This document shows, piece by piece, positions 60,127-62,756 of a stretch of DNA of 64,000 bases (position 1 is its first letter; each line of letters begins with the position of its first letter). This stretch comes from Rebecca billardiae RCC1528 (lineage: Eukaryota; Protista; Haptophyta). Location: contig OZ251234.1 of assembly GCA_965240325.2 (NCBI GenBank), positions 1,364,001 through 1,428,000 of the forward strand, in the 5' to 3' direction. Both the position numbers and the translations under genes were made by a program. The notes beneath the pieces are model-generated. The model saw only the letters and a list, made by a program, of their open reading frames with translations. It ran no database searches and was not told the DNA's origin.

Positions 60127-62756
60127 TCATTTCCGCGCGCGCTTGCTCGCACTGCCCGGCGTGCCGCCCCCCTTGGAGCCCGAGGCAGCCTCGGGCTGCT
60201 CGCCGCGCTGAGCGCGCACGGCGGCTGCGAGCGCGGCGACGTGCTGCTCCGTCTCGGCCCAGCCGAAGCACTCGCTGCCCGGCACGCGCAGACGCGCACA
60301 GCGCAGGCGGAAGCGAGGAAGGACACGCGCGTCAGGCGAGGGGGCGCCGCGCCGCGCGCCGCGAGCGCTGGTCACGCGCGCGCACCCGCCGATGCTCACG
60401 CCGTACGCCAGCTTGCGGTGCGGCACCACCTCCTGCGTGCCCTCGTGCAGGAATGCGGGCAGGAGCACGCCCGCCGGCCGACATGGCCTGCAACGGGCGC
60501 CGCGCGGCTCACATGAGGGCCGCGGCGCGCGGGCGGGCGCGGGCGGCGACGAGAGGCGCGAGGCGCGCGCGCGCACCCGCCCTCCTTGACCGCCTCCACG
60601 ACGCGCGCCACGAGCTGGCGCTGCGCCTCGAGCGTGCTCGCCGGCGGCTCCGCCTGCTCCGCGCCCGCGCCCGCCGCACCGCCTGCGTGTGCGGCGGCCG
60701 GCTGCGGGCCGTCGAGCGCGCAGTCGACGACGGGCGCACTCGGCAGCCCGGCCTCGCGCAGCGCCTCGGACGCGGCGCGCAGGTTGGCGTCGCCGACGAC
60801 GACGGCGTGCGCGTCGGCGTTGCCCTGGGTGTGCACAATGCCTGCCAGGTTCTCCTTGGAGACCGAGAGGAAGACGTGCGCGCCGTTCGCGCGGCCGACG
60901 GAGTCGCGCGTGCGCGTCGCCGCGCAGACGCCGCCGCCCGCGTCGCCCGCCGCGCGCGCGCCGTCCGCGCCGACGCGCACGCCGACCGGCATGGAGAGGC
61001 CGGAGGCGAGCTCGGACATGAGGTAGTGCGAGGCGGCGCGCGCGTCGAGCGCGGTGTACGACGCGAGGTCGGCGAGGTACTGCGGCATGATCGTGTCCAT
61101 GAAGTCGGTCGCGACCGGCAGCGCGAGCCCCGCCGCGGCGAGCAGCAACGAGCGCGCCTCGCGCAGCCCGCTGTTGATGCGGCACGAGCCGTCGAGGCCC
61201 GGGTCGGAGACGAGGCCCTTCCAGCCCGCGCCGGCGTGCGCGCGCTCGAAGGTCGCGCCGAGCACGACGCACAGCTCCGACGCGTGCCGCGCCGCGAGCG
61301 AGCGCAGCCGCCCGGCGAACTCGAGCGCCGCGCGCGTGTCGTGCACGACGCGAGGCCCGACCACCACCAGCAGCTTGCTGCCCGCGCGCGCGCGCCCGTC
61401 CGCGCGCACGATGGCGCCGATCTCGGCGCGCGCGGCGGCGATGAGCTCGGAGGCCGCGGGTGCGCACGGCTGCTCGAGGATCAGGCACGCGGGCGGGAGG
61501 AGCGGCTTGATTCCACGGATGCGCAGGTTGTCCGTCGCGCTGTTGACGTGCTCGCCGTACGGCGCCGCGCCGCCCGCGAGCGGCGGCAGCGGGCGCGCGC
61601 GGCCGGCCGAGCGGCGGCGCGAGCGGCGGTGGCGCGCGCCGTCGGCGAGCTGCTCGATCAGCTCCTTGGTCATCGTCCAGTCGATGCACGGGTCCGTCAG
61701 ACTCAACCCGTACACCGGCGGCGGCGCGGGCGCCGCGCCATCGCCGGCGCCGCCCGGCGCGTGTGCGCGGCCGTGCCCGGAGAGCAGGAAGCTCTTGAGG
61801 CTCACGCCACACACGGCGCCCTCGCCCTCGCCGATGGCGCGCGCGACGGCCGAGGCGCACGCGGCCTGCGCGGCGCACGCGTCCGCCGCGCTCGCGTCGT
61901 AGCAGTCCACGAGCACGAGCGAGCCCAGGTTGTGCGCGCCGAGCGTGCCCGCGAGCGCGCGCGCGCGCGAGAGCGCGTCGGGGCCTCCGACGATCGGATG
62001 GCAGTCGTCGTTGCCGCCCGTGTGCACGATGCCCGCGACGCCCTGCTTCGAGACGGAGAGGAAGGCGTGCGGCATGCGCGCGCCCTGCAGCGCGCGCAGC
62101 AGCGCGTGCGACTCCGCCGACGCCGAGTCGAAGTCGGGCCCGCCCCCGCGGTCGCAGAAGGCGACGGGCATCGACAGGCCGCTCGCGAGCTCGATGTGCG
62201 TCTGCGACGCAGTCGTGTGCGGCGACATCCACAGCCACGTGACGAGGTCGGCGAAGAACTGCGGCTGGAGCATGTCGTGGAATGTCGTGCCGACGGCGAG
62301 GCCCATCTCGAGCACGCGCACGAGCAGCTGCCGCGCCGCCTGCAGGCCGCGGTTGATGGCGAACGAGCCGTCGCGCGCGGGGTCGTGGATGAAGCCCTGC
62401 CAGCCGCGCGTGCGCGACGGCTTGCGGAAGTTGAGGCGCATCACGACGAGCACGTCGCGCTCGTGGCGGCGCGCGACCTCGCGCAGCTTCATCGCGTAGT
62501 CGAGCGTCGCGGCCGGGTCGTGCACCGTGCACGGGCCCGCGACCACGATCACGCGGTCGTCCTCGCCCGCGAGGATGGCGCGCACCGCCGCGCGCGAGTC
62601 GGCGACCGTCTGCTGGATGGACGCGCTCGACGGCACGTCCTCCATCAGGCAGGCCGGTGGTACCATCGGCGTGATCGCCCGAATGCGCAGGTCATCCGTC
62701 TCCGAGTGGCGCAGCCGCGAGAGTTCCGCCGCGCGCTTCATCGCCGTGGACGTCAT
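60127..62756 (-). CDS. Tandem double class-I(alpha) DAHP synthase-like protein, ~809 aa (exons 60577-62756, 60386-60487, 60127-60274)
   Basis: Two complete AroF/G/H-like domains (DDLRI..GPCTVHD..GWQGFIHDP..ELASGLSMPV..YGLSLTDPCIDW; DNLRI..GWKGLVSDP..ELASGLSMPV..YGVSIGGECFGW); two GT-AG introns keep the frame. Confidence 0.92.

What the first reader, a model, noticed from the sequence alone, without database searches (positions are those of the whole stretch)
60127..62756. Tandem pseudo-DAHP synthase: catalytic residues lost, phenylalanine pocket kept - candidate aromatic amino-acid sensor
Seen: an intact spliced gene fusing two full class-I DAHP synthase barrels. By eye against E. coli AroG motifs, domain 1 changes KPRT to KPSR, GAR165T to SPHT, FK186N to FCD, LR234GG to IVGG, SH268AN to YDAS and E302 to K. 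Domain 2 changes GPC61 to GPR, KPRT to RAHA, K186 to R, H268 to L, E302 to P and D326 to G. Established: these residues bind PEP, E4P and the metal. By contrast, the Phe allosteric-site elements are kept in both domains: N-terminal D(D/N)LRI, PQ..AD (P150/Q151), SGLS (S180) and FLSVSK (F209/S211/K214), with Ser at the position that marks Phe- rather than Tyr-regulated enzymes. In AroG that site lies at the tight dimer interface, which a tandem fusion would fix covalently. No signal or transit peptide is evident; the linker is RHRRSRRRS and the protein ends KRARK, which is NLS-like. Inference: a catalytically dead, ligand-binding pseudoenzyme acting as a Phe sensor or as a regulatory subunit of an active DAHP synthase.
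Basis: partly seen in the sequence, partly recalled or inferred. Interest (0 to 1): 0.88.

Follow-up and report, generated by a model that had tools for sequence, protein, structure and literature searches.

The report
Tandem dead DAHP synthase, haptophyte-wide
This algal gene fuses two copies of the first enzyme of aromatic amino-acid synthesis; both copies have lost their catalytic residues but kept the phenylalanine-binding regulatory pocket, and related proteins occur in both classes of haptophyte algae, so it is probably a conserved amino-acid-binding regulator that databases currently label as an enzyme.

Summary
A three-exon gene on the minus strand (62756..60127, 809 aa) encodes two complete type I-alpha DAHP synthase domains. 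Domain 1 keeps 2 of 4 metal ligands. Domain 2 keeps none. Most PEP/E4P-binding residues are replaced in both.

It is not a decaying duplicate:
- Dead-dead tandems occur in Prymnesium, in a Pavlovales strain and in many marine metagenome clusters.
- All dead domains form one clade, sister to an active-active tandem enzyme.
- Catalytic positions vary freely across the family. 8 of 10 published AroG feedback-resistance positions are at least 90% conserved (p = 9e-5).
- Two other assemblies of the same species differ from the window by 6 synonymous and 1 non-synonymous change.
- AlphaFold2 gives one compact two-domain body (pTM 0.88).

There is no N-terminal targeting peptide. Every complete family member ends in K-K/R-x-K/R, which looks like a nuclear localisation signal.

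Ligand binding, expression, localisation and partners remain untested. No RNA run was listed, and no paper in the searched library describes the family.

The scan flagged this stretch once before, and a second tandem pseudo-DAHP synthase on another piece of the same genome.

The parts
60127..62756 (-). Whole gene: start codon to stop codon, 3 exons, 809 aa
60577..62756 (-). Exon 1: domain 1, the linker and most of domain 2 (aa 1-726 plus two bases of the next codon)
   Evidence: Pfam and NCBIfam
60488..60576 (-). Intron 1, 89 nt, GTGCGCGCGC...TTGCAG
   Evidence: The frame shifts across it and homology to AroG 296-312 resumes after it. A homologous intron is present in L003.
60386..60487 (-). 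Exon 2: ...PCRPAGVLLPAFLHEGTQEVVPHRKLAYGVSIGG (domain 2 strand 8 region; E302 is replaced by P)
   Evidence: The sequence is conserved in L003.
60275..60385 (-). Intron 2, 111 nt, GTGCGCGCGC...GGGCAG
   Evidence: It holds 3 of the strain differences, a density of 2.7% against 0.29% in the exons.
60127..60274 (-). Exon 3: ECFGWAETEQ...AAAVRAQR, a G/S/P-rich spacer, then SKRARK and the stop codon
61623..62756 (-). Domain 1 (aa 1-378): a DAHP synthase I-alpha barrel. It keeps C61, R92, K97 and D326 and has lost R99, R165, K186, R234, H268 and E302.
61536..61622 (-). Inter-domain linker SRRRSAGRARPLPPLAGGAAPYGEHVNSA. It is partly low-confidence in AF2 (pLDDT below 50 at residues 399-408).
60187..61535 (-). 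Domain 2 (aa 408-790, interrupted by both introns): all four metal ligands are lost, and of the PEP/E4P residues only R165 is kept
62682..62696 (-). Domain 1 N-terminal DDLRI (AroG D6-I10). In AroG this strand completes the partner subunit's Phe site.
61518..61532 (-). Domain 2 N-terminal DNLRI. Asn at AroG position 7 is the only fixed D1/D2 difference across the family.
62244..62273 (-). Domain 1 MLQPQFFADL (AroG M147, P150, Q151, A154)
62157..62192 (-). Domain 1 ELASGLSMPVAF (AroG L175, L179, S180), followed by Cys in place of K186
62025..62063 (-). Domain 1 hairpin FLSVSKQGVAGIV (AroG F209-V221)
61065..61094 (-). Domain 2 TIMPQYLADL
60978..61013 (-). Domain 2 ELASGLSMPVGV, followed by Arg in place of K186
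60834..60872 (-). Domain 2 hairpin FLSVSKENLAGIV. The pocket residues F209, S211, K214 and V221 are kept. Positions 215-217 diverge from the family consensus QGV.
60130..60147 (-). C-terminal SKRARK. The K-K/R-x-K/R motif is conserved at the C-terminus of all 15 dead-family members whose C-terminus is known.

Best explanation
The gene encodes a non-catalytic descendant of a tandem (two-barrel) type I-alpha DAHP synthase.

Inferred architecture. The two barrels pack against each other within one chain, in the way the two subunits of the AroG tight dimer do. The N-terminal strand of each barrel (DDLRI, DNLRI) would complete the regulatory pocket of the other barrel. That gives two composite, slightly different aromatic amino-acid sites.

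Shown. Both active sites have lost their metal and substrate ligands and are free to vary across the family. The pocket, the beta6a/6b hairpin and the N-terminal strands are held nearly invariant.

Inferred function. The protein still binds phenylalanine. Tyrosine is the more likely ligand in the Pavlovales members, which carry Gly at AroG position 211. Binding would be turned into a change of the surface loops that used to form the active site, and a partner would read that change. In this view the protein is an aromatic amino-acid sensor or regulator, not an enzyme.

Inferred location. It has no N-terminal targeting peptide. It has a flexible C-terminal spacer ending in a conserved K-K/R-x-K/R motif. 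I therefore place it in the cytosol and/or nucleus rather than the plastid.
For: Two full DAHP_synth_1 domains are present.

Catalytic residues. Across 25 dead domains they are replaced by varied residues. For example, K186 becomes C, R, Q, G, V, E, F or H. They are invariant in 32 active domains. Of 108 positions conserved in active enzymes, 64 are released in the dead family, and these cluster in the active-site loops.

Regulatory pocket.
- 8 of the 10 AroG feedback-resistance positions listed in PMC9529685 are at least 90% conserved in the dead family. The background is 62 of 320 positions (Fisher p = 9e-5). None of 10 catalytic positions reaches that level.
- Hairpin positions 212-221 are more conserved in the dead family than in active enzymes.
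- In the window's domain 1, all 14 pocket residues that I list from memory of the 1KFL structure are identical to AroG.

Structure. AF2 of the exon-1 product gives pLDDT 86.4 and pTM 0.88, with a confident domain 2 N-terminal strand. The Prymnesium orthologue gives pLDDT 88.0 and pTM 0.87, with a disordered linker and tail. The best structural match is the Phe-bound AroG structure 1kfl_A (TM-score over the target 0.92). The tight dimer is the functional and allosteric unit of a type I-alpha enzyme (PMC4735112).

Age and selection.
- Orthologues occur in Prymnesium parvum, in Pavlovales sp. CCMP2436 and in more than 10 metagenome clusters.
- All dead domains form one clade (SH-aLRT 96). It is sister to the active tandem P0006/P0008 (96), which shares the hairpin FLSVSKQGVAGIV.
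- Strain differences are 6 synonymous to 1 non-synonymous (P about 0.002). Three more differences fall in the 111-nt intron 2.
- NG86 dN/dS against the 58%-identical homologue is 0.41.

Location. N-termini are short, and the C-terminal K-K/R-x-K/R motif is present in all 15 members with a known C-terminus.
Against: - No ligand-binding, activity, expression or localisation data exist. No RNA run could be listed, and the one run that could be laid shows only two 151-nt DNA-like contigs.
- Several pocket residues (P150, Q151, S180, F209) are also invariant in every active I-alpha enzyme. They could be kept for folding or for the dimer interface rather than for a ligand.
- The tools return no model coordinates. 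The tight-dimer-like packing and an open pocket are inferred from pTM and conservation, not measured.
- The window's domain 2 is the fastest-evolving domain in the family (end branch 1.95). Its hairpin departs from the family consensus at positions 215-217.
- dN/dS of 0.41 is only moderate constraint.
- The NLS call is a pattern match only.
Confidence: 0.55

Rival explanations
1. It is a regulatory (prozyme-like) subunit. One dead tandem is equivalent to one tight dimer. It would pair through the weak tetramer interface with a tight dimer, or a tandem, of an active DAHP synthase. Alternatively it docks onto another shikimate or aromatic-pathway enzyme such as chorismate mutase and confers Phe/Tyr control on it.
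For: - Type I-alpha enzymes are dimers of tight dimers (PMC4735112).
- The tetramer salt-bridge residues are mostly kept in the family: position 24 is acidic in 24 of 25 domains and R124 is present in 18 of 25. The residue at the tetramer centre (AroG 217) is Val in 24 of 25 dead domains but variable in active enzymes.
- The sister active tandem P0006/P0008 has the same hairpin sequence.
- From my own knowledge: DAHP synthase acts as an allosteric platform for chorismate mutase in Mycobacterium and Corynebacterium. A DAH7PS-CM bienzyme assembly paper also appears in the listing (PMC8408635, abstract only).
Against: - R124 is Gln in the window's own domain 1.
- The taxon of P0006/P0008 is unknown. 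No haptophyte-named active type I enzyme appeared among the listed hits.
- A paper on E. huxleyi treats the shikimate genes as plastid-located (PMC4301891). This protein has no targeting peptide and has an NLS-like tail.
Confidence: 0.22
2. It is a structural, scaffold or other non-ligand role. In that case the conserved pocket residues are kept only because they hold the two barrels together, and no aromatic amino acid is bound.
For: - The pocket lies in the tight-dimer interface, which involves 79 residues per chain (PMC4735112).
- P150, Q151, S180 and F209 are invariant in all active enzymes, whatever their effector.
Against: - Positions that vary among active enzymes with different effectors are fixed in the dead family: 147, 154, 175, 179, 211, 214 and 221.
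- The only variation at position 211 is Ser or Gly. An S213G variant of the N. meningitidis enzyme, at the equivalent position, was crystallised in studies of Tyr binding (PDB titles 4hso and 4ixx).
Confidence: 0.13
3. It is a neofunctionalised enzyme, with the barrels catalysing a different reaction through new residues.
For: - Domain 1 keeps R92 and P98 in all members. The window's domain 1 also keeps C61, K97 and D326.
- (beta/alpha)8 barrels often evolve new activities (general knowledge).
Against: No replacement residue at the former active site is conserved across the family. The active-site loops are its most variable parts.
Confidence: 0.05
4. It is a decaying duplicate, that is, a non-functional gene.
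For: Catalytic residues are lost, the window's domain 2 sits on a long branch, and there is no RNA evidence.
Against: - The spliced frame is intact over 809 aa.
- The family is kept in both haptophyte classes at about 40% identity, with 70 of 330 positions at least 90% conserved.
- Strain differences are 6 synonymous to 1 non-synonymous, and 5 to 0 within domain 2.
Confidence: 0.02

Closest known systems
E. coli AroG and N. meningitidis DAH7PS (Phe-sensitive type I-alpha DAHP synthases; PDB 1KFL, 4HSN)
   Same: - The fold matches: TM-score over the target is 0.92 to 1kfl_A, with 36-38% identity per domain.
- It has the N-terminal strand and the beta6a/6b hairpin.
- The Phe-pocket residues are identical to AroG in domain 1.
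- The tight dimer is the allosteric unit.
   Different: - Two barrels are fused in one chain.
- Metal ligands and PEP/E4P ligands are lost in both barrels.
- It carries a C-terminal basic tail.
- It is not expected to make DAHP.
Active-active tandem DAHP synthases found here (P0006/P0008, taxon unknown; chlorarachniophyte P0107-P0111 and P0114)
   Same: The two-barrel architecture is the same. P0006/P0008 are the sister clade of the dead family and share its hairpin FLSVSKQGVAGIV.
   Different: - All 14 catalytic positions are intact in both of their barrels.
- Their basic K/R motif lies at the N-terminus, not the C-terminus.
- The chlorarachniophyte tandems arose separately according to the tree.
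Yeast Gal3 (an inactive galactokinase paralogue that senses galactose); from my own knowledge
   Same: It is the same concept: an enzyme paralogue that has lost catalysis, keeps ligand binding and acts as a sensor.
   Different: The fold, ligand and lineage are unrelated. Gal3's partner (Gal80) is known, whereas no partner is known here.
Trypanosomatid prozymes (AdoMetDC, DHS) and the plant TSB-like pseudoenzyme that enables indole synthesis (PMC12727527, abstract)
   Same: In each case a dead paralogue of a biosynthetic enzyme regulates the active enzyme by heteromerisation.
   Different: Heteromerisation is unproven here. This protein keeps an allosteric-effector site rather than a half active site.

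Membership tests
DAHP synthase type I-alpha (PF00793; TIGR00034 aroFGH) | Profile match above the curated cut-off | tested here: met
   PF00793 scores 214 bits in two stretches. TIGR00034 scores 273 bits (D1) and 191 bits (D2, exon-1 part) against a cut-off of 173.
DAHP synthase type I-alpha (PF00793; TIGR00034 aroFGH) | (beta/alpha)8 barrel with an N-terminal strand and a beta6a/6b hairpin | tested here: met
   AF2 gives pLDDT 86.4. Foldseek finds 1kfl_A with TM-score over the target 0.92 and rmsd 2.0.
DAHP synthase type I-alpha (PF00793; TIGR00034 aroFGH) | Metal ligands C61, H268, E302, D326 | tested here: not met
   D1 keeps C61 and D326 only. D2 keeps none.
DAHP synthase type I-alpha (PF00793; TIGR00034 aroFGH) | PEP/E4P ligands R92, K97, R99, R165, K186, R234 | tested here: not met
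   D1 keeps R92 and K97. D2 keeps R165. All six are invariant in 32 active domains.
DAHP synthase type I-alpha (PF00793; TIGR00034 aroFGH) | DAHP synthase activity | not testable with these tools
   Needs an enzyme assay or aroFGH complementation.
Phe-type allosteric site of AroG | Feedback-resistance positions D146, M147, P150, Q151, L175, L179, S180, A202, F209, V221 (PMC9529685), and Ser at position 211 | tested here: met
   The window's D1 is identical to AroG at all the pocket positions checked; A202 was not read for the window. D2 has T147 and is otherwise identical. Family-wide, 8 of 10 positions are at least 90% conserved.
Phe-type allosteric site of AroG | Measured binding of Phe | not testable with these tools
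   Needs ITC or DSF.
Pseudoenzyme (a conserved, non-catalytic enzyme homologue) | Homology, loss of catalytic residues and purifying selection | tested here: met
Classical monopartite NLS | K-K/R-x-K/R in an exposed, flexible segment | tested here: met
   The pattern is present in all 15 known C-termini. The tail has low pLDDT in the P0003 model. This is a pattern match only.
Classical monopartite NLS | Nuclear import | not testable with these tools
   Needs tagging or microscopy.
Prozyme-type regulatory subunit | An active paralogue in the same organism, and a heteromer with it | tested here: inconclusive
   An active sister clade exists (P0006/P0008), but its organism is unknown. This genome could not be searched for an active enzyme.

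The most novel reading that the evidence does not exclude
A nuclear or nucleo-cytoplasmic phenylalanine/tyrosine receptor built from a covalently fixed, catalytically dead DAHP synthase dimer. It would couple aromatic amino-acid levels to gene expression, or to a partner enzyme, across haptophyte algae. It would be the first amino-acid sensor derived from this enzyme family, comparable in logic to yeast Gal3.
Probability: 0.25. Interest if true: 0.9.

Novelty: new variant of a known kind. Interest (0 to 1): 0.74.

Why it matters
Haptophytes such as Emiliania, Prymnesium and Phaeocystis are major ocean primary producers. From my own knowledge, little is known about how they sense nutrients.

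This family offers a directly testable candidate sensor for aromatic amino acids. Its ligand site can be predicted residue by residue from a well-studied bacterial enzyme.

It is also a clean natural example of an allosteric site outliving the active site it once controlled. Covalent fusion of a homodimer has let the two composite sites diverge: Asp against Asn at position 7.

There is a practical consequence. Automated pipelines name these proteins 3-deoxy-7-phosphoheptulonate synthase. They pass the TIGR00034 equivalog cut-off, and JGI and UniRef give that name. Metabolic reconstructions of haptophytes may therefore count an enzyme that is not one.

Tried and rejected
- RNA evidence. No RNA run was listed. 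The single run that could be laid held only two 151-nt contigs in exon 1. Expression and splicing stay unconfirmed by reads.
- Transcript-sized contigs L002, L005 and L006 have no poly-A tail. L002 keeps the introns and L006 carries a second gene, so they are not evidence of transcription.
- Organism of the active tandem P0006/P0008. Contig neighbours, the ESM Atlas and cluster-member names gave no taxon.
- A named active type I DAHP synthase from a haptophyte. None was among the listed hits. The candidate lists were capped at 8000, so this is not evidence of absence. Type II enzymes were not searched.
- Literature. Seven full-text searches found no paper on tandem or pseudo DAHP synthases, and nothing on them turned up in the two searches run for pocket-residue support.
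- C-terminus of the 58% homologue P0002. It could not be resolved because there are further introns.
- Geometry of the D1-D2 interface. It could not be measured because no model coordinates are returned.
- The spliced 809-aa protein has no tool reference. Searches and the fold therefore used the exon-1 product (726 aa) and the complete Prymnesium orthologue.
- dN/dS against P0002. dS is about 0.86 with GC3 at 96%, so it is probably saturated. I treat 0.41 as an upper-bound-like, rough value.
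Full report
**The gene.** The minus strand between 62756 and 60127 holds one gene. A long ORF starts at the ATG at 62756 and loses homology to DAHP synthase near 60577. 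Homology resumes twice, each time in another frame and each time after a GT...AG interval. Joining exons 62756-60577, 60487-60386 and 60274-60127 gives an open frame of 809 aa that ends SKRARK. Both introns (89 and 111 nt) begin GTGCGCGCGC and end CAG.

A 58%-identical homologue on a Logan contig (P0002, locus L003) has introns at the same two positions, and the second begins GTGCGC. Its exon 2 is conserved at the protein level. Three of the differences between the window and two other assemblies of the same species fall in the 111-nt intron 2. I could not confirm splicing with RNA reads. No RNA run was listed, and the one run I could lay held two short contigs only.

- Pfam finds DAHP_synth_1 twice.
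- NCBIfam TIGR00034 (aroFGH) scores 273 bits for domain 1 and 191 bits for the exon-1 part of domain 2, against a cut-off of 173.
- The best solved relatives are Phe-sensitive E. coli AroG and the N. meningitidis enzyme.
- I transferred AroG numbering from the HMMER alignment to a MAFFT alignment of 70 domains.
- Domain 1 keeps C61, R92, K97 and D326. It has R99S, R165H, K186C, no R234, H268D and E302K.
- Domain 2 has C61R, R92G, K97R, R99H, K186R, H268 lost, E302P and D326G. It keeps R165.
- In 32 active domains all of these positions are invariant.
- The roles of these residues (metal, PEP, E4P, Phe site) are established knowledge for AroG. The feedback-resistance positions come from PMC9529685. 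The fuller pocket list, taken from the 1KFL structure paper, is from my memory.

**It belongs to a conserved family.** A search with the exon-1 product found the following full-length two-domain relatives:
- Prymnesium parvum (P0003, 741 aa);
- Pavlovales sp. CCMP2436 (P0005, 733 aa);
- about ten marine metagenome clusters;
- more divergent forms from picoplankton-size fractions (P0017, P0031).

Every one of these is dead in both domains, and each is dead in a different way. K186, for example, is C, R, Q, G, V, E, F or H. The best named hits are haptophytes, and notes from other agents on this genome also call it a GC-rich haptophyte (unchecked).

**Constraint has moved from the active site to the regulatory site.**
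- Of 330 alignable positions, 70 are at least 90% conserved in 25 dead domains.
- None of 10 catalytic positions is among the 70.
- 8 of the 10 published AroG feedback-resistance positions are among them, against 62 of 320 for the background (Fisher p = 9e-5).
- Of 108 positions conserved in active enzymes, 64 are released in the dead family. They cluster at 91-109, 157-173, 186-187, 232-237, 265-273, 300-302 and 320-326, which are the active-site loops.
- The hairpin 212-221 and positions 154, 156, 176 and 179 are more conserved in the dead family than among active enzymes. Those positions vary with effector specificity in active enzymes, which argues for a ligand constraint and not only a folding one.
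- Position 211 is Ser everywhere except in the Pavlovales members, which have Gly. From my own knowledge, this is the Phe/Tyr switch residue. An S213G variant of the N. meningitidis enzyme was solved in that context (PDB titles).
- The only fixed difference between domains 1 and 2 across the family is Asp against Asn at position 7, in the N-terminal strand. The two composite sites are therefore not equivalent.

**Origin.**
- In a maximum-likelihood tree of 63 domains, all dead domains form one clade (SH-aLRT 96).
- That clade is sister (96) to an active-active tandem enzyme, P0006/P0008, of unknown organism.
- Long-branch attraction could inflate this grouping. However, P0006/P0008 share the exact hairpin FLSVSKQGVAGIV with the dead family, which is independent support.
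- Among the Prymnesium-type members, the D1 domains and the D2 domains form separate clades. In the Pavlovales members D1 and D2 cluster together, which I read as gene conversion because they still carry the D1/D2 Asp/Asn signature.
- Chlorarachniophyte tandems (P0107-P0111, P0114) and a TrpD-DAHPS-DAHPS fusion (P0113) are fully active-looking and arose separately.
- Fusing the tight dimer has therefore happened more than once. This fits the finding that the tight dimer, not the tetramer, is the functional and allosteric unit (PMC4735112).

**Selection on the window's own gene.**
- Two Logan assemblies of the same species (L001, L002) differ from the window at 7 coding sites. Six are synonymous. 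The seventh is A341V, in a low-complexity insert.
- Domain 2 alone has 5 synonymous and 0 non-synonymous differences.
- With 27% of random changes being synonymous, 6 or more of 7 has P about 0.002. The numbers are small and the two assemblies share some of the sites.
- NG86 dN/dS against P0002 is 0.41 (D1 0.36, D2 0.48), with dS about 0.86 and GC3 96%. It is a rough value.

**Structure.**
- AF2 of the 726-aa exon-1 product gives pLDDT 86.4 and pTM 0.88.
- The complete Prymnesium orthologue gives pLDDT 88.0 and pTM 0.87, with two full barrels, a disordered linker and a low-confidence C-terminal tail.
- A pTM this high for two equal domains means the model places them confidently relative to each other.
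- The domain 2 N-terminal strand is also confident (pLDDT about 90).
- I could not inspect coordinates, so "packed like the AroG tight dimer" remains an inference.
- Foldseek's best match is 1kfl_A, the Phe-bound AroG structure.

**Location.**
- The N-terminus has only about 20 residues before DDLRI and no hydrophobic stretch. The orthologues are equally short. A signal peptide or bipartite plastid peptide is therefore unlikely.
- After the last helix (AAAVRxRR), every family member has a G/A/S/P-rich spacer and then K-K/R-x-K/R within a few residues of the end. This holds for all 15 members with a known C-terminus.
- This matches the classical monopartite NLS consensus (my own knowledge). No localisation test was possible.

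**Mechanism.**
- Best supported (0.55): a ligand-sensing pseudoenzyme as set out in the Best explanation section.
- Main rival (0.22): a regulatory subunit of an active DAHP synthase or another pathway enzyme. The tetramer-interface residues are mostly kept in the family, but R124 is Gln in the window's domain 1. I could establish neither the organism of the active sister enzyme nor the presence of an active enzyme in this genome.
- Less likely: a purely structural role (0.13), a new catalytic activity (0.05) or a decaying duplicate (0.02).

**Context and novelty.**
- The neighbouring genes are a CHD1-type remodeller (48654-53114, plus strand) and a Mesd homologue (63222-63995, minus strand). 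Neither has a metabolic link.
- Seven full-text searches found nothing on tandem or catalytically dead DAHP synthases.
- Databases label these proteins "3-deoxy-7-phosphoheptulonate synthase" or "hypothetical protein".
- The scan had flagged part of this stretch before (s1-343856). It had also flagged a second tandem pseudo-DAHP synthase on another piece of the same genome (s1-367726). That copy may correspond to P0002, but I could not test this.

Noticed in passing
P0107-P0111, P0114 (chlorarachniophyte transcriptomes and genome); P0006/P0008 (metagenome, L004:268-2733): These are two-barrel DAHP synthases with every catalytic residue intact in both barrels. According to the tree they arose independently of each other. 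The chlorarachniophyte ones carry an N-terminal helix-like LxxILxRLxxIE segment followed by a KKPK or KKKLK motif. P0006/P0008 carry SARKRARSS near the N-terminus. I found no paper on tandem DAHP synthases.
   Followed up: partly
P0113 (1119 aa, metagenome): This is a triple fusion: an anthranilate phosphoribosyltransferase-type domain (PF00591) followed by two active-looking DAHP synthase barrels.
   Followed up: no
window 60576-60567 and 60385-60376 (minus strand); L003 about 9381: Both introns of the gene start with the same ten bases, GTGCGCGCGC. The homologous intron in the 58% homologue starts GTGCGC. This may be an extended donor consensus in this lineage.
   Followed up: no
window 63222-63995 (-): A Mesd homologue (PF10185, E = 7e-14) with an apparent signal peptide and a basic tail lies next to the gene. 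Mesd is known as a chaperone of LDL-receptor-family proteins in animals. The same neighbour is on the Logan contig L001.
   Followed up: no
window 48654-53114 (+): A CHD1-type chromatin remodeller (chromo domain, SNF2 domain, Helicase_C, CHD1 HTH) is split across at least two ORFs, presumably by introns.
   Followed up: no
window 59090-59870: A GC-rich stretch just downstream of the gene has six-frame ORFs that repeat a unit like GRAARGSGAAR(A/V)QGERR. It is probably a tandem DNA repeat in the intergenic region.
   Followed up: no
P0003, P0010, P0057-P0099 and others: Public annotation (JGI, UniRef) names the dead tandem proteins 3-deoxy-7-phosphoheptulonate synthase. Both domains of the window's protein pass the TIGR00034 equivalog cut-off, so automated pathway reconstructions will miscount them as enzymes.
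   Followed up: partly
P0017, P0031, P0328, P0330 (Tara and other marine metagenomes): A more divergent branch of the dead family has a truncated, degenerate first domain. It still keeps the pocket residues and the C-terminal KKxxR tail.
   Followed up: no
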